Positions 11,165 through 60,144 of a stretch of DNA of 64,000 nt are shown here, one piece after another. How positions within the stretch are numbered: the stretch's first letter is position 1; the number at the start of each line of letters is the position of its first letter. The DNA comes from Salpingoeca rosetta (lineage: Eukaryota; Protista; Choanoflagellata): contig JAWQFM010000015.1 in assembly GCA_033442325.1 (NCBI GenBank), positions 58,794 through 122,793 on the forward strand, in the 5' to 3' direction. Below the pieces are notes generated by a model. That model had not been told where the DNA came from. It did no database searches and saw nothing but the letters and a program-made list of their open reading frames with translations. Position numbers and translations under genes: made by a program.

Positions 11165-17472
<6,308 letters not shown>

Positions 17473-54655: not shown

Positions 54656-55069
54656 ACGTACGCGCACCAAAGACTCACTCCAAACACATACCACACACAC
54701 GCACACACACATACATTCACACACAAACGCACGCACATACAGGACATGCGTTCAATGTTGTCGAACGTGATTGGTGCTGTGGACTCCACACACGCACCGC
54801 AGGCCCTCGAGCAACACGCAGCACAACCAGCATCAGCTTCAGCTTCAGCATCAGCGTCAACATCAACATCAACGTCAACATCAGCATCGCAGACAACATC
54901 ATCACAGGCGGCAGCGTCAGCGGATGCGAGCAAGGCGGGCCATGCACGCCAGCGCGATGTTGCTGAGCACAGCGGTGGCAGTGGCGGGTCGATGGTGGTG
55001 GTGGTGGCTGGGATCGTGGTGGCGGTGGTGGCGGCACTGGTGGGCTGGTTTGTGGCCGTCGCAGAGTAG
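51546..55069 (+). CDS. ODR4: ODR4 homolog (tail-anchored ER factor for GPCR maturation)
   Basis: IGLLVG...[20 protein letters not shown]|[36 protein letters not shown], and C-terminal [27 protein letters not shown]. Confidence 0.85.
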
Positions 55070-55163
55070 TAGTACACACGTTCAACAAACGTCAAGAAAT
55101 GTGATTGGGTGTATGTTGGGTGTGTTGGCGTGTGTTGGGTGTGTGCATGTGTTGGCGAAGGTG

Positions 55164-55396
55164 TCAGCTGGCACGGTCTGATGCGAGGCGGGAGTAGACG
55201 TGCTCGGAGGAGCGGGGAGGAGTAGATTGCACCGACGTCTGCACATAATCGCAATCACCACAAGCCAGTTCACAGTCATGAGGGGGGGGGGGATGGGATG
55301 GTGAGGTACGGAGGGAGCAAGGAAGATCGTGCAAGTTTGAGGTACAGCCGAAGAATACATACATACATACATACATACATACATACATACATACAT

Positions 55397-55427
<31 letters not shown>

Positions 55428-56622
55428 CAGCCAACCACGTTGCAGACCATGTTGAGTGCAGAGTAGACGGGCTGGTCAGACGATGGTGGGGATGAGGATG
55501 ACGGCGGAATTGGGGGCAGTGGTGACGAGAGCACATCTGGCGGTGCACTGACGCGCTGGCGCCTCTTCTCCTCAATCTCAGCAGCAGTCACTCGTGTCTG
55601 CAAGCCCAAACACACGCACACACACATATGCACATGGGGGCGGGTATGGGAGATGAGAACACCAACGAATCGAACGAAACCGCAAGCCAGCTGGGTACGC
55701 ATGCACCGCATTCCGACAACCAGACTCTGACCACCACCGCCACCTTCACCACAACCCCTCGTCGTCAGTACCTGGGAGTGCGGGATGGAGTAGAGGGCGT
55801 GCGGGTCCTCCAGCTCGTGCTGCAGGTCGTGGTCGAGTTGCAGCTGGATCGACGTCTTCGGTCGCTGTCCTCGCCGCGTTGTGCCTCGACTCACCACCTG
55901 CCCCGCCCCCGTGGCCGTTCCTGGACCTTGATGCGCCACTGTGCCGTCACGCCTGCCGCCACCGCGGTGCGGGCTGCTTGTATCGAGCGATGTGTCCAGC
56001 GCCTGCGAGTAGTAGTGCCCCTCTTCCTCGTCAGGGTCACCTGCCTCTGCATATTCATGCTCTAATGCAGCAACTGTTGTTGCTGTCGTGCTGGCTGCTG
56101 TTGACGCTGATGTTGTCATGAGGGGGCGGCCGTAGTCCTGCACGAGTGTGCCATCATCGTTGTCGTCCTCGCTCGTGTCACCGTCGCTCTCAATCGCACG
56201 CGCGCGCTCGTCAATTCTTGCGTAAGCGACAGATTCCGGACTTTCGGTCCGCAGGGCCAGCTGCTCCAGGCGGCGGTTTGCAGCAATGTCCGGATCTTCC
56301 TCGTCCTCCTCCGCAGCAAAGTCGTCATCGTTGAGGAAGCGAACAGGCGCCGTGTCTGGTGGTGGTGGTGGTGGCGGTGGTGTTGTGGTTGCAAGTGCCA
56401 GTGCGAGTGTGAGTGTGAGTGAGTGTGAGTGAGTGTGGGTGAGTGTGGGTGAGTGTGATGGTGAGTGTGAGCGAGCGGGTGAGTGAGTGTACACACACAC
56501 ACACACACACATACATACATACGCGCTTCGCAAGCCAACATCCACAAGTTTGATGCACCACCTGCGAGCTGGCTTGCGACGGGTTGTGGCTCGAGATTCT
56601 TCTCAGAATAGCGGAAGGCAGC

Positions 56623-56670
<48 letters not shown>

Positions 56671-57980
56671 AAAGATATGTGAGCCGGTGCAGCAGCAGCC
56701 GCATTCCATCTGCCTTCCTTGACGCCCTCCGCCTTCCCTTCCCCCTCACTTGCTCGCACCTTACAGCCGCCGCTCGCCGATGCAAGGTTGCAGCACGTCC
56801 ACTTCCCGCGGAAGAACACGCCCGGGTGATACAGCTTGTGCTTTGAGGAGCGATTCTGGGGCAGCATGCACGCTGCACGCATGTGTGTGTGTGTATGCGT
56901 GTGGGCAGGTGTTTGGTGGTGAGAATGTTGGATGCTGAGTGTGTTAGCGTGGGTGTTCTTCCATCAGTGCATGTTGGTTGGTGTGCTATGTGGGGGCAGC
57001 CGTGCATGACAGCACTGCATATGGACAGTAGAATGTATGCACCTCTTCGAATATCCTCGATCCTTCGTGCGCGTGCGTGAGAGAGTGTGATAGTGTGAGT
57101 GTGAGTGAGTGAGTGTGGGAGAGTGAGAGAGTGGGGAGAAATGCAGGTTGAGTGGTGTGAGATGTAGCAAACTAATGGTGTTGGTCCAGGCACATGGGGA
57201 GCGCAGCGAAATGGTATTTTGATGGGCTCACCAATCTGCTAGCTGGGCACTGTTGGCAGCGGAAATGTACAGGGTCGCCTCATCGTGTACAACCTGAATG
57301 TCAGTCGATACGCGCGCGTGAGCTGTGAGCGCAAGTACTCTGTTCGATCGCGAGCTACTGCCTCGTACACGACCACATAGACACAGACACACCCAGCCAC
57401 CCACCCACACAAACACACACAGACACACACAGACACACACAGACACACACAGACACACACAGACACACACGACCACCCACCCACACACCCACCCACCCAC
57501 ACACACCCCCACACACACACCTGGATGAGGGAAGGTCTGTCCCAAACACTGCCATCGCATCGTTCACATGACCGAATGGACTGCAGTGGGATTGATCCTC
57601 TGAGTTTCAAGTCCTCCTAATCCCCGGATCAAACACAGGCAGTCACTTTGCAAGTGAGCAATCTCATGATGAAGGGAGGGAGAGAGGGATGCGAAGCGAC
57701 AAGCGCGATGCCAGATAGGATGGTGGGCACGATGGCAAGCATAGTGGCAGGCAGCCAAGCCGCCAGCAGCAAACACAGACACACACACAGACACACACAC
57801 ACACACTTACACACACAGACGAATACACACCGTGGCGACGCCCTTGTAGTAGTTGAGGCTGCTTGGGGTGAGCACAAACGTGCGCTTGCGGAAGGTAAAG
57901 TGCGTGATGGCGCTCTTGCCCTGTGCCCTCTTCTCAAGCACCCCGCGTCGAAGCCAATGCCTCGTGTCCTCATCCACCAT
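55164..57980 (-). CDS. PH plus Btk-motif (Tec-homology) protein without a kinase domain; tyrosine-motif-rich tail
   Basis: GVLEKRAQGKSAITHFTFRKRTFVLTPSSLNYY...LRGSIPLQSIRSCE...IQ|VVHDEATLYISA...W|IEDIRR (Tec-type PH). LYHPGVFFRGKWTCC...GGC (Btk Zn motif). Acidic tail with many Tyr motifs ending EHVYSRLASDRAS*. Confidence 0.85.
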
Positions 57981-58486
57981 CGCGCCGTTCTCGATGTTCA
58001 CTTGCTTGCTGGCTTGCTTGCTGCCTCGCTCGTTTGCTGTGTCGTCCTTCTTCTTTCTCCAGACACACCTTCCACCTCTTGCTCTTGACACACCTTGCAC
58101 CTCGTGTTCTTGACACACCGTCCGCCTTTCCACCTCGTGTTCTTGACACACCTTCCCTGCCTTTCGCTTCCTTCTCGACGCTGCCTTCTTGTCAATCCCA
58201 AACCACAGCAGCGCGCGCACCACAACGACAACGCTTTTGCCTTTGTGTCGTTTTGTCCTTGTCCTCCTCAGCATGCAATTTGCAAAGTTGCACAGCCTTG
58301 AGTACCACAATTTGCAAATGACGGGCATAATAATTTTTTGTTAATTTTGTTGTTGCGGGGGGCTTGTGGGCGAGTACCTGGTACCTCCAGTCAAAGTACG
58401 CGTGTGCAGAGTGCCTTTTTCCCCCTTCCGCACAGCACCAGCACCACCAACCCTCTCTCGGATACAACGCGCACGAGAACAGCATC

Positions 58487-60144
58487 ATGGCTGACGTCCA
58501 GGTTGAGGAGTTCACCGGCGAGGTCGACGTCGAGGAGACGGAGATGGTCCCTGTCGATACCGAGATGGAGCAGGTTGAGATCAAGATGTTCAACAAGTGG
58601 TCTCTCGACGACGTGAAGGTCGACGACCTCAGCCTTGAGGTGCGTCGTCCTCACTTGCACTGGCACGCGTGCTTGTTTCGTGCACCGCAAATGGGAACAA
58701 GGGAGGCACGTGGTGGTGGTGGTGGTGGTGGTGATGATGATGGTGCGTGCGCGCGTGTGTGCACACGGGGGTCGTGCCGATGAACTGCTGCAGCTGCGTC
58801 AGCAGTGAGCAGGGCAAGGAAGGTTGCCACGCAGCCATTGTTGTGGTTTGCGGTGACAGCCGTCCAAGCAGCACCAACACCACCACGCAGCATCAGCACG
58901 TGGCACACGCAACACAACTGTTTCATGTGGTCGATGGAAGAGGATGATTAGGGTGCAGCCTGCACAGCAGCGTTCCTGCCTCTGCATCAGCACTCGTCAT
59001 TTCGGTGTCTGTTCCCTCCCTCGTTTTTCTTTCCCATTCCCAACCACGATACGTTGACAAGACACTCACCCTCACCCTCGCTCCCTGTCTTCTGTTCTTC
59101 TTTTGTTATGCCTCGTTACTTTGTTGTTGTTGTTGTAACAGGATTACATTGCCACAAAGGACAAGGCTGCCCGCTTTGTGCCCCACACCGCTGGCCGCTA
59201 TGCCAAGCGCCGCTTCCGCAAGGCCCAGGTGTGTTGTTTTGTGGTGCCATAAATTGTGTTACTGCAGTGTTTGCTCCCGGATGGGCTGTGCCTTTGCTGC
59301 ACACGCTGGCCCTGTTCCACGCCTTCCGTTGACGCCGATTGGGAGAGATGGGTGTATACGTATTTGCCTTTGTTGTCACCTACACCACCCATTGTTGTCA
59401 CTTACACCACCCCTTGCTTCTTTCCTTTGGTTTGTTTGGCTGTGATAGTGCCCCATTGTGGAGCGCGTCGTCAACTCCATGATGATGCACGGCCGCAACA
59501 ACGGCAAGAAGCTCATGACCACCCGCATCCTCCGCCACACCTTCGAGATCATCCACCTCACCACCGGCGAGGTACGGAGGCAGCTCACTGCCCTTGAGAG
59601 CTTTTTTTGGGGAGGATAGGAGAGACAGGGTGGCGTGGCAGACGTGGTAGTATGGGAATTGTGGTTGGCGGTCTCCTTATGGCAAGCGAGAGCGCACCTG
59701 ACCCTCCAGCACGCACACACGCACTCTCTCACACACATATTTGTACGCACGTGCTTTCAACTCTTTCTCATCCTCACCCCTCATTCCACTCTTTTGTGTC
59801 CTCTGTCTTGTTGCTTGTGCAGAACCCCGTCCAGGTCCTCGTCAACGCCGTTGCCAACTCTGGTGCCCGTGAGGACTCCACCCGTATTGGCCGCGCCGGT
59901 ACCGTCCGCCGTCAGGCTTGCGATGTGTCTCCTCTCCGCCGCGTCAACCAGGCCGTGTGGCTCATCTGCACCGGCGCCCGTAACGCCGCCTTCAGAAACA
60001 TCAAGAGCATCGCCGAGTGCCTTGCCGACGAGATCATCAACGCCGCCAAGGTGATTCGCTGCTGTTCATTCTTGTTCATGTTTGTGTGCGTGCTTGGTGG
60101 TGTTGTTGTTGGTGTTGTTGTTTAAGTTGTTTAAGTTGTTTAAG

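What the first reader, a model, noticed from the sequence alone, without database searches (positions are those of the whole stretch)
55164..57980. Kinase-less Tec/Btk-type PH-Btk adaptor carrying a phosphotyrosine-motif tail
Seen: a PH domain that keeps the Btk-type basic phosphoinositide signature (KRAQGK...FRKR), then a Btk Zn motif (YHPG...WTCC...GC). No SH3, SH2, kinase or RasGAP domain is visible. Instead there is a disordered acidic tail with VAYARI (ITIM-like), DYGRP and LYSIP (YxxP), HEYAEA, HYYSQA, PVYSAL and HVYSRL (YxxL), plus a PxxP stretch (PLPPIPP). The stop lies 95 bp from the convergent ODR4 stop, so there is no room for downstream kinase exons. Known: the PH-Btk module normally occurs in Tec kinases and GAP1-family RasGAPs. 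Inference: a lipid-recruited, Dok/Gab-like docking protein built from the Tec membrane module, i.e. a possible lineage-specific phosphotyrosine signalling architecture.
Basis: partly seen in the sequence, partly recalled or inferred. Interest (0 to 1): 0.8.

Follow-up and report, generated by a model that had tools for sequence, protein, structure and literature searches.

The report
Kinase-less Tec-type PH-BTK docking protein
This is a real, expressed Salpingoeca rosetta gene for a protein with the membrane-binding head of a Tec/Btk kinase but no kinase; it ends in a disordered tail with two conserved tyrosine motifs, belongs to a family found only in choanoflagellates, and probably acts as a lipid-recruited docking protein.

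Summary
Window 55164-57980 (minus strand) is a nine-exon GT-AG gene. Its 436-aa product is identical to the annotated hypothetical protein PTSG_05814 of Salpingoeca rosetta.

- **Domains:** Pfam finds only PH (residues 11-111) and the BTK zinc motif (124-141). The rest is predicted to be disordered.
- **Transcript:** RNA data confirm every splice junction, including a 20-nt microexon, and the in-frame stop.
- **Gene limits:** a divergent RPS5 gene and a convergent ODR4-like gene leave no room for kinase or RasGAP exons. A true Tec kinase and a GAP1 RasGAP lie on other contigs.

New here: this is not an orphan. Orthologues occur in at least five other choanoflagellates. They form a well-supported clade whose PH-BTK module groups with Tec kinases, not GAP1 RasGAPs. 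The phosphoinositide-pocket and zinc residues are invariant.

In the tail, only two tyrosine motifs are widely conserved: Y407 (YSAL) and Y427 (E..YSRL), always 20-23 residues apart. A sister subgroup that includes the acanthoecid Didymoeca costata carries a tyrosine-rich linker plus a divergent SH2 domain.

A PIP3-recruited phosphotyrosine docking role is the best reading, but it is inferred, not shown. I found no paper on this family. I rate it a new variant of a known kind, of moderate interest.

The parts
55164..57980 (-). Coding span of the gene (PTSG_05814), 436 aa. Nine exons: 57980-57831, 57616-57521, 57293-57232, 57062-57043, 56872-56760, 56622-56562, 56355-55772, 55597-55448, 55238-55164.
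   Evidence: Manual model with all GT-AG introns, identical to P0001. A spliced transcript contig and stranded reads support it.
57981..58307 (-). 5' UTR, unspliced. It ends about 120 bp from the start of the divergent RPS5 transcript (about 58430).
   Evidence: The X5 transcript contig reaches 58307. RPS5 molecule ends pile up at 58430. RPS5 was identified by a Ribosomal_S7 hit on 59458-59619.
54900..55163 (-). 3' UTR. It runs on past the laid stretch and overlaps the last exon of the convergent ODR4-like gene (ORF end 55069).
   Evidence: The contig and same-sense reads continue without a splice from exon 9 through 54900.
56868..57950 (-). PH domain, residues 11-111, split over exons 1-5. 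Pocket residues K17, R31, R33, Y44 and R56 correspond to BTK K12, K26, R28, Y39 and K53.
   Evidence: Pfam PH 51.2 bits. Alignment to BTK and TEC chains. Conservation across nine family members. AlphaFold pLDDT is mostly 85-94 (one 10-residue block at 65), and the top 34 PDB fold matches are BTK or TEC PH-TH.
57043..57062 (-). 20-nt microexon (exon 4) encoding part of the C-terminal PH helix (W-IEDIRR).
   Evidence: It is needed to keep the frame and restores a canonical PH helix. The transcript contig has an unplaced stretch of about 20 nt exactly between exons 3 and 5.
56763..56831 (-). BTK (Tec-homology) zinc motif, residues 124-146, with ligands H125, C136, C137 and C146.
   Evidence: Pfam BTK 29.2 bits on exon 5 and 25.9 bits on the protein. 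The four ligands are invariant in nine family members.
56243..56338 (-). Conserved acidic segment just after the BTK motif (residues 174-205; family consensus D.DF...DPDE.SDARL). It is predicted to be partly helical.
   Evidence: Alignment A1. Helices 177-183 and 189-201 at pLDDT 55-70.
55451..55474 (-). Conserved tyrosine motif 1, QPVY(407)SALN (family pattern Y-[AS]-x-L-[ND]).
   Evidence: Present in 5 of 6 members of the SH2-less subgroup. About 0.01 expected per shuffled tail.
55185..55205 (-). Conserved tyrosine motif 2 near the C-terminus, EHVY(427)SRL (family pattern E-x-x-Y-x-[RT]-L).
   Evidence: Present in 5 species, with a near-match in P0153. About 0.003 expected per shuffled tail. 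In four of five species Y1-Y2 spacing is 20-23 residues.
55781..55801 (-). HALY(356)SIP, a YxxP motif shared only with Choanoeca flexa (TYSRP).
   Evidence: Alignment A1.

Best explanation
The locus encodes a stand-alone Tec-type PH-TH (PH + BTK zinc motif) membrane-targeting module fused to a disordered tail of about 290 residues. The protein belongs to a family found across choanoflagellates.

Proposed mechanism:
1. The PH pocket binds a 3-phosphoinositide (PIP3 or PI(3,4)P2) or soluble IP4. This brings the protein to membranes where PI3K is active.
2. There, tyrosine kinases phosphorylate the two conserved C-terminal motifs (Y407 YSAL and Y427 E..YSRL, 20 residues apart).
3. The paired phosphotyrosines recruit SH2-domain proteins, possibly a tandem-SH2 partner.

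The protein would then act as a lipid-gated docking adaptor, analogous to metazoan Gab/Dok proteins, which choanoflagellates lack.

Shown: gene structure, expression, domain content, absence of a kinase, Tec-type affinity of the module, and family-wide conservation of pocket residues, zinc residues and the two tyrosine motifs.

Inferred: lipid specificity, phosphorylation, SH2 recruitment and the adaptor role.
For: - **Gene and transcript:**
- **Domains:** only PH and BTK are found. The tail has pLDDT below 50.
- **Structure:** the top 34 PDB fold matches are BTK or TEC PH-TH. The best sequence match among solved structures is TEC PH-TH, E 2e-12.
- **Key residues:** BTK K12, R28 and Y39 equivalents are invariant, K26 and K53 equivalents are basic in 9/9 and 8/9 members, and the four zinc ligands are invariant.
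- **Orthologues:** Salpingoeca infusionum, Monosiga brevicollis, Choanoeca flexa, Hartaetosiga balthica and Didymoeca costata, plus environmental sequences. The clade has 99/90 support and sits with Tec, separated from GAP1 at 95/92.
- **Tail motifs:** the two motifs recur in otherwise unalignable tails, with 0.002-0.02 expected per shuffled tail, and at constant spacing. Acidic residues lie at -3/-4 of the tyrosines.
- **Sister subgroup:** it has 9-14 tyrosines in the region after the BTK motif and a C-terminal SH2-like domain (hhalign 90%, E 1.6e-6, FLVR arginine aligned). This places the family in phosphotyrosine signalling.
- **Literature:** no bona fide Gab/DOS protein is reported in Monosiga (PMC2747914). 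Substrates of premetazoan tyrosine kinases are described as unknown (PMC5043372).
- **Paralogues:** S. rosetta has its own Tec kinase and GAP1 RasGAP elsewhere.
Against: - There is no direct evidence of tyrosine phosphorylation, lipid binding or SH2 binding. I found no phosphoproteomic record for this protein.
- Most tyrosines in the S. rosetta tail are not conserved.
- The motif patterns were defined after seeing the alignment, so the shuffle statistics are post hoc.
- The H. balthica orthologue keeps only one of the two motifs.
- N24 of BTK is Thr in S. rosetta, so lipid specificity could differ.
- YxxL is also a generic sorting signal.
Confidence: 0.55

Rival explanations
1. Phosphoinositide buffer or competitor. 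The free PH-TH module competes with Tec, Akt or PDK1 for PIP3 (or sequesters IP4/IP6), as PH-only proteins such as PHLDA3 do for Akt. The tail only tunes stability or localisation.
For: The PH pocket and zinc site are the most conserved parts. S. rosetta has a true Tec kinase with which it could compete. The two fixed differences in the PH exons between the reference and the RNA-run strains are synonymous, whereas the tail carries amino-acid changes and a 5-aa indel.
Against: Pure competition does not explain conserved tail motifs at fixed spacing in five or more species. It also does not explain an SH2 domain in the sister subgroup.
Confidence: 0.2
2. Membrane-trafficking adaptor. The YxxL motifs act unphosphorylated as YxxPhi sorting signals, and the acidic D.DF/DPDE segment acts as a binding motif for adaptor or clathrin machinery. 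The PH-TH module would supply membrane identity.
For: YxxPhi motifs, acidic clusters and a lipid-binding head are typical of endocytic accessory proteins (established knowledge). The acidic segment is conserved.
Against: YxxPhi sorting signals normally work in the cytosolic tails of membrane cargo, not in soluble proteins. SH2-bearing relatives and the Tec-type module point to tyrosine-kinase signalling. No canonical DPF/FxDxF or clathrin-box motif was seen.
Confidence: 0.1
3. The conserved tail segments are intramolecular regulators. For example, the acidic helix or the C-terminal motifs fold back on the basic PH pocket. The protein's output would then be something other than SH2 docking.
For: An acidic, partly helical segment directly follows the basic PH-TH module and is conserved. 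Tec kinases use PH-mediated autoinhibition (PMC13648279).
Against: There is no confident contact in the model, because tail pLDDT is low. This reading does not say what the output would be.
Confidence: 0.1
4. Annotation artefact. The locus is a truncated Tec kinase or GAP1 RasGAP gene whose other exons lie elsewhere or are joined by alternative splicing.
For: None beyond the usual context of the PH-BTK module.
Against: The transcript contig runs unspliced from the 5' UTR into exon 1 and from the stop codon through the 3' UTR. RPS5 and an ODR4-like gene flank it tightly. Complete ORFs of the same architecture exist in transcriptomes of other species. Tec and GAP1 genes are present at other loci.
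Confidence: 0.02

Closest known systems
Tec-family tyrosine kinases (BTK, TEC, ITK, BMX; MbTEC of Monosiga brevicollis)
   Same: N-terminal PH domain followed directly by the BTK zinc motif. The pocket residues and zinc ligands are the same. The best sequence and fold matches are TEC and BTK PH-TH, and the module groups with Tec in the tree.
   Different: No SH3, SH2 or kinase domain, and no conserved proline-rich region. A disordered tail with tyrosine motifs follows instead. S. rosetta has a separate true Tec gene.
GAP1-family RasGAPs (RASA2, RASA3, RASA4, RASAL1)
   Same: They also carry a PH-BTK module.
   Different: In GAP1 proteins the module is C-terminal to C2 and RasGAP domains. Here it is N-terminal with nothing upstream. 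The tree separates GAP1 modules from this clade at 95/92.
Gab/DOS, Dok and IRS docking proteins
   Same: The layout is the same: an N-terminal lipid-binding PH domain, then a long disordered region with tyrosine motifs. A C-terminal pair of tyrosines at fixed spacing recalls the Gab1 Y627/Y659 bisphosphoryl motif for SHP2 (cited in PMC2747914).
   Different: They are not homologous. The PH is Tec-type with a zinc motif, there is no PTB domain, no conserved Grb2-SH3 sites were found, and there are far fewer conserved tyrosines. Gab/DOS proteins are reported absent from Monosiga.
DAPP1/Bam32 and TAPP-type small PH adaptors
   Same: These are small, non-catalytic adaptors that bind 3-phosphoinositides and become tyrosine-phosphorylated. 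The sister subgroup with an SH2 (PH-BTK...SH2) has the same domain pair as DAPP1.
   Different: The domain order is reversed, the PH domain carries a BTK zinc motif, and the lineage is unrelated. This comparison rests on general knowledge and was not tested here.

Membership tests
PH-TH (PH + BTK motif) module | PH fold followed by a His-Cys-Cys-Cys zinc-binding BTK motif | tested here: met
   Pfam PH 51.2 bits and BTK 25.9/29.2 bits, both above their cut-offs. H125, C136, C137 and C146 are invariant. The fold matches BTK PH-TH with TM about 0.7 over about 158 columns.
PH-TH (PH + BTK motif) module | Canonical inositol-phosphate pocket residues (BTK K12, K26, R28, Y39, K53) | tested here: met
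   K17, R31, R33, Y44 and R56 align to these residues. They are invariant or conservatively basic in the family. N24 is Thr in S. rosetta.
PH-TH (PH + BTK motif) module | Actual zinc and PIP3/IP4 binding | not testable with these tools
   This needs recombinant protein.
Tec-family tyrosine kinase | SH3-SH2-kinase (Src module) C-terminal to PH-TH | tested here: not met
   No such Pfam domains are found. The transcript ends at an in-frame stop with a continuous 3' UTR. A convergent gene lies 94 bp away.
GAP1-family RasGAP | C2 and RasGAP domains N-terminal to PH-BTK | tested here: not met
   The unspliced 5' UTR abuts the divergent RPS5 gene. The GAP1 gene of this genome is on contig C23. The tree separates the two modules.
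Gab/DOS docking proteins | Gab-type N-terminal PH, proline-rich Grb2-SH3 sites and multiple pTyr docking motifs (hallmarks as given in PMC2747914) | tested here: not met
   The PH is Tec-type. PLPPIPP is not conserved. Only two tyrosine motifs are conserved. This is a functional analogy, not membership.
Dok/IRS docking proteins | PH followed by a PTB domain | tested here: not met
   There is no PTB/IRS Pfam hit.
ITAM | Two YxxL/I motifs separated by 6-12 residues | tested here: not met
   The tyrosines are 20-23 residues apart, which leaves 16-19 residues between the motifs. That is longer than an ITAM. From memory, it is closer to paired ITIM/ITSM or BTAM spacing.
Choanoflagellate kinase-less PH-BTK family A (defined here) | N-terminal Tec-type PH-BTK, an acidic D.DF...DPDE segment and C-terminal Y[AS]xL / E..Y.[RT]L motifs | tested here: met
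   Alignments A1 and A2. Clade support is 98 SH-aLRT and 99/90.

The most novel reading that the evidence does not exclude
The kinase-less PH-BTK proteins of choanoflagellates are not degenerate Tec kinases. Instead they would represent the ancestral free-standing form of the PH-TH module, a PIP3-gated phosphotyrosine scaffold that sometimes carries an SH2. Fusion of this module to a Src module would then have created the Tec kinases. On this reading, choanoflagellates run a lineage-specific PI3K-to-phosphotyrosine docking system that fills the role of the missing Gab/Dok adaptors.
Probability: 0.12. Interest if true: 0.75.

Novelty: new variant of a known kind. Interest (0 to 1): 0.5.

Why it matters
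Choanoflagellates have very large tyrosine-kinase repertoires. Even so, the substrates and docking proteins that connect those kinases to downstream effectors are largely unknown (PMC5043372), and Gab/DOS adaptors are reported missing (PMC2747914). The PH-TH module is usually described as a hallmark of Tec kinases.

A conserved, expressed family that uses this module without a kinase, with a pair of conserved tyrosine motifs and SH2-bearing relatives, gives a concrete candidate link between PI3K lipids and phosphotyrosine signalling in the closest relatives of animals. S. rosetta is genetically tractable, so the idea can be tested directly. The family also bears on how the Tec architecture was assembled.

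The limits are clear. All parts are known modules, the protein is already in databases with PH and BTK domains precomputed, and the function is inferred.

Tried and rejected
- The word-index search with the PH-BTK region found only the protein itself. The same search with the family alignment was swamped by low-complexity words and returned only three members. The exhaustive HMMER search was what found the family.
- Accession searches in the paper library (PTSG_05814, MONBRDRAFT_24955, A9UY87, XP_001745403) found nothing. The two supplementary files held as text for the S. rosetta p38 signalling paper, which I searched for phosphorylation data, do not mention the gene. Manning et al. 2008 is not held.
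- Run X1 behaved like DNA of a divergent strain and said nothing about splicing.
- Loose ends at 55031 and 55750 lie in repeat tracts. I read them as strain differences, not as junctions to other exons.
- I looked for SH3, SH2 and kinase exons downstream of the second BTK-motif locus on contig C6 and found none. That locus is a second kinase-less family, not the Tec gene.
- An ITAM reading was rejected on spacing. An ITIM reading of VAYARI was rejected because the motif is not conserved.
- I ran no complex prediction, because phosphotyrosine-dependent binding cannot be modelled that way.
Full report
**1. What is in the sequence**

The window is eukaryotic, with short exons separated by introns full of CA/TG microsatellites. 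On the minus strand I assembled a nine-exon model with canonical GT-AG introns. The exons are 57980-57831, 57616-57521, 57293-57232, 57062-57043, 56872-56760, 56622-56562, 56355-55772, 55597-55448 and 55238-55164. The stop codon is TGA at 55166-55164.

The 436-aa product is identical to database protein P0001, which NCBI names hypothetical protein PTSG_05814 of Salpingoeca rosetta.

**2. Transcript evidence**

A 2020-nt contig of run X5 lies on exons 9, 8, 7, 5, 3, 2 and 1 exactly at my boundaries. It has two unplaced stretches, 67 nt and 19 nt long. These are the sizes expected for exon 6 plus the repeat-masked end of exon 7, and for the 20-nt microexon.

The contig runs unspliced from exon 1 to 58307 (5' UTR). 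It also runs unspliced from the stop codon to beyond 54900 (3' UTR).

Raw stranded RNA reads (X17, X18) cover the exons at roughly 0.5-15x, thinnest over the short 5' exons, in the orientation expected for a minus-strand RNA. Depth is about zero in the bins that fall wholly inside four of the introns. Loose read ends spell the e5-e6, e7-e8 and e8-e9 junctions.

Reads of very high depth on the other strand begin at about 58430. They belong to the divergent RPS5 gene (Ribosomal_S7 hit). The convergent plus-strand ORF ends at 55069, and one of its exons gives a weak ODR4-like hit. The gene is therefore closed on both sides, with no room for kinase or RasGAP exons.

**3. Domains and structure**

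Pfam finds PH (11-111, 51.2 bits) and the BTK motif (124-141, 25.9 bits; 29.2 bits on exon 5 alone) and nothing else.

The closest solved sequences are TEC PH-TH (2lul, E 2e-12) and BTK PH-TH. An AlphaFold model built on the family alignment gives mostly pLDDT 85-94 for the PH domain (one 10-residue block at 65), about 75 for the zinc motif and below 50 for nearly all of residues 158-436. Short helices appear at 177-201 and 367-375. The top 34 Foldseek matches in the PDB are BTK or TEC PH-TH modules.

In the HMMER alignment to BTK, K17, R31, R33, Y44 and R56 fall on BTK K12, K26, R28, Y39 and K53. These are the inositol-phosphate pocket residues, by established knowledge of the 1B55 structure. 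S. rosetta also has Lys at the position of BTK E41, but this is not conserved in the family.

**4. Relatives**

The exhaustive HMMER search with residues 1-150 found 256 proteins at E 1e-3 or better. The best hits are short proteins with an N-terminal PH-BTK module and no other Pfam domain:

| Species | Protein | Length | Note |
|---|---|---|---|
| Salpingoeca infusionum | P0002 | 331 aa | complete ORF |
| Choanoeca flexa | P0004 | 389 aa | |
| Hartaetosiga balthica | P0005 | 313 aa | complete ORF |
| Monosiga brevicollis | P0003 (MONBRDRAFT_24955) | 1321 aa model | PH-BTK at 895-1036 |
| unnamed (environmental) | P0153 | 382 aa | |
| unnamed (environmental) | P0012 | 437 aa | second subgroup |
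| Didymoeca costata | P0019 | 464 aa | complete ORF, second subgroup |
| unnamed (environmental) | P0025 | 496 aa | second subgroup |

The Monosiga model is probably a fusion. An ATG exon reading MSAGSLLQQG, with a GT donor, joins the same acceptor and gives the N-terminus seen in all orthologues. The annotated C-terminal extension looks non-coding.

In a 107-sequence tree the nine proteins form one clade (98 SH-aLRT). In a careful 46-sequence tree:
- the clade has 99/90 support;
- GAP1 RasGAP modules are separated from the Tec kinases plus the kinase-less families at 95/92;
- the position of the clade within the Tec-type radiation is unresolved.

**5. The S. rosetta genome has four such loci**
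- This gene, on contig C15.
- A GAP1 RasGAP on C23, with C2 and RasGAP exons upstream of its BTK motif.
- A true Tec kinase on C1, with PH, SH3, SH2 and kinase exons collinear.
- A second kinase-less PH-BTK gene on C6, which belongs to a different family (see section 9).

**6. The tail**

Across the family the tail is hard to align, apart from three islands:
- an acidic segment just after the zinc motif (D.DF...DPDE.SDARL);
- a DD.DD...F.P patch, in which the S. rosetta DYGRP tyrosine is Phe in the orthologues;
- two tyrosine motifs near the C-terminus.

The Y[AS]xL[ND] motif occurs in S. rosetta (Y407), S. infusionum (twice), M. brevicollis, C. flexa and P0153. The E..Y.[RT]L motif occurs in S. 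rosetta (Y427), S. infusionum, M. brevicollis, C. flexa and H. balthica, usually 2-9 residues from the C-terminus.

Shuffled tails give 0.002-0.02 such matches each. The patterns were chosen after seeing the alignment, so this statistic is post hoc.

The two tyrosines are 20-23 residues apart in every species that has both. LYSIP is shared only with C. flexa.

The second subgroup, whose one named member (Didymoeca costata) is an acanthoecid, has 9-14 tyrosines in the region after the BTK motif, many of them as hydrophobic-Y-[AS]-x-hydrophobic. It ends in a domain that profile comparison identifies as a divergent SH2 (90%, E 1.6e-6, with the FLVR arginine aligned; Pfam SH2 E 0.06 on P0025).

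**7. Interpretation**

The shown facts are a conserved, expressed, kinase-less Tec-type PH-TH protein with two conserved tyrosine motifs and SH2-bearing relatives.

The most economical mechanism is a 3-phosphoinositide-recruited docking adaptor that is tyrosine-phosphorylated and then bound by SH2 proteins. The fixed 20-23-residue spacing suggests a bidentate, tandem-SH2 partner. From memory, this resembles paired ITIM/ITSM motifs or the Gab1 bisphosphoryl motif more than an ITAM.

The literature gives context. Gab/DOS proteins are reported absent from Monosiga (PMC2747914). Substrates of premetazoan tyrosine kinases are called unknown (PMC5043372). PIP3 control of the Monosiga Tec kinase through its PH domain has been shown biochemically (PMC13648279).

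None of the functional steps has been shown for this protein. The rivals are a PIP3 competitor, a trafficking adaptor and an intramolecular regulator. An annotation artefact is effectively excluded.

**8. Novelty**

No paper in the searchable library mentions the gene or its Monosiga orthologue. Searches on kinase-less PH-BTK architectures returned only work on Tec kinases. The protein is in public databases as an uncharacterised PH-domain protein, with PH and BTK domains precomputed.

I rate it a new variant of a known kind: a new, lineage-restricted architecture built from known modules. Interest is moderate. The scan had not noted it before.

**9. Side observations**

- **Second kinase-less family:** the C6 locus has orthologues in S. 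infusionum (P0069) and Choanoeca perplexa (P0072). Four of its members, and the S. rosetta gene itself, end in a conserved V-[TA]-Y-V carboxy-terminus, which looks like a PDZ ligand.
- **Tandem repeats:** several environmental proteins carry two or three PH-BTK modules in tandem.
- **Strain differences:** the strains behind the RNA runs differ from the reference. Two differences in the PH exons are synonymous. In the tail there are two synonymous and two amino-acid differences (one at only about a quarter of the raw reads), plus a 5-aa insertion in a Ser/Thr/Ala-rich tract.

Noticed in passing
G000:C6:518700-519540 (loci L003, L005:8860-10000, L007:690-1545), minus strand: A second kinase-less PH-BTK gene in S. 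rosetta, from a different family. Orthologues are P0024, P0028, P0069 (S. infusionum, 319 aa complete ORF), P0072 (Choanoeca perplexa, 266 aa complete ORF) and P0091. It has a Ser/Thr-rich tail. The S. rosetta gene, P0024, P0069 and P0072 end in a conserved V-[TA]-Y-V carboxy-terminus that looks like a PDZ-binding motif. No SH3, SH2 or kinase exons lie within about 9.7 kb downstream.
   Followed up: partly
Proteins P0019 (Didymoeca costata), P0025, P0012: The sister subgroup of the family has a PH-BTK module, a tyrosine-rich linker (9-14 Tyr after the BTK motif) and a divergent C-terminal SH2-like domain (hhalign 90%, E 1.6e-6; YCIR aligned to FLVR). This PH-BTK...SH2 architecture has no kinase.
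   Followed up: partly
L009:9540-9660 and 11920-12470 (Monosiga brevicollis CH991549.1): The 1321-aa model MONBRDRAFT_24955 looks like a fusion or over-extension. An alternative first exon (MSAGSLLQQG, GT donor) joins the PH exon and matches the N-termini of the orthologues. The sequence after ...HYARLER reads like translated non-coding DNA.
   Followed up: partly
window 57043-57062 (-): A 20-nt microexon encodes part of the C-terminal helix of the PH domain. The transcript contig supports it with an unplaced stretch of the right length.
   Followed up: yes
window 58307-58430: An intergenic region of about 120 bp is shared with the divergently transcribed, very highly expressed RPS5 gene (transcript ends pile up at 58430). 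It is probably a bidirectional promoter. At the other end, the 3' UTR overlaps the last exon of the convergent ODR4-like gene.
   Followed up: partly
window 56105; also 55491, 55502, 56039, 56110, 57288, 57885: The strains behind the RNA runs differ from the reference. There is a 15-nt in-frame insertion (5 aa) in the Ser/Thr/Ala-rich tract. The two differences in the PH exons are synonymous (K32, V84). The tail has two synonymous changes, S398F, and S250A at about a quarter of the raw reads.
   Followed up: yes
Proteins P0006, P0018, P0021, P0022, P0029 (environmental, unnamed): Proteins with two or three PH-BTK modules in tandem and no other detected domain form their own cluster on the Tec side of the tree.
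   Followed up: no
G000:C1:2516100-2520730 (L008), minus strand; G000:C23:706500-713550 (L004): The bona fide Tec kinase of S. rosetta (PH, SH3, SH2 and kinase exons collinear) was missed by the BTK-motif scan of the genome. The GAP1-type RasGAP has C2 and RasGAP exons upstream of its BTK motif.
   Followed up: partly
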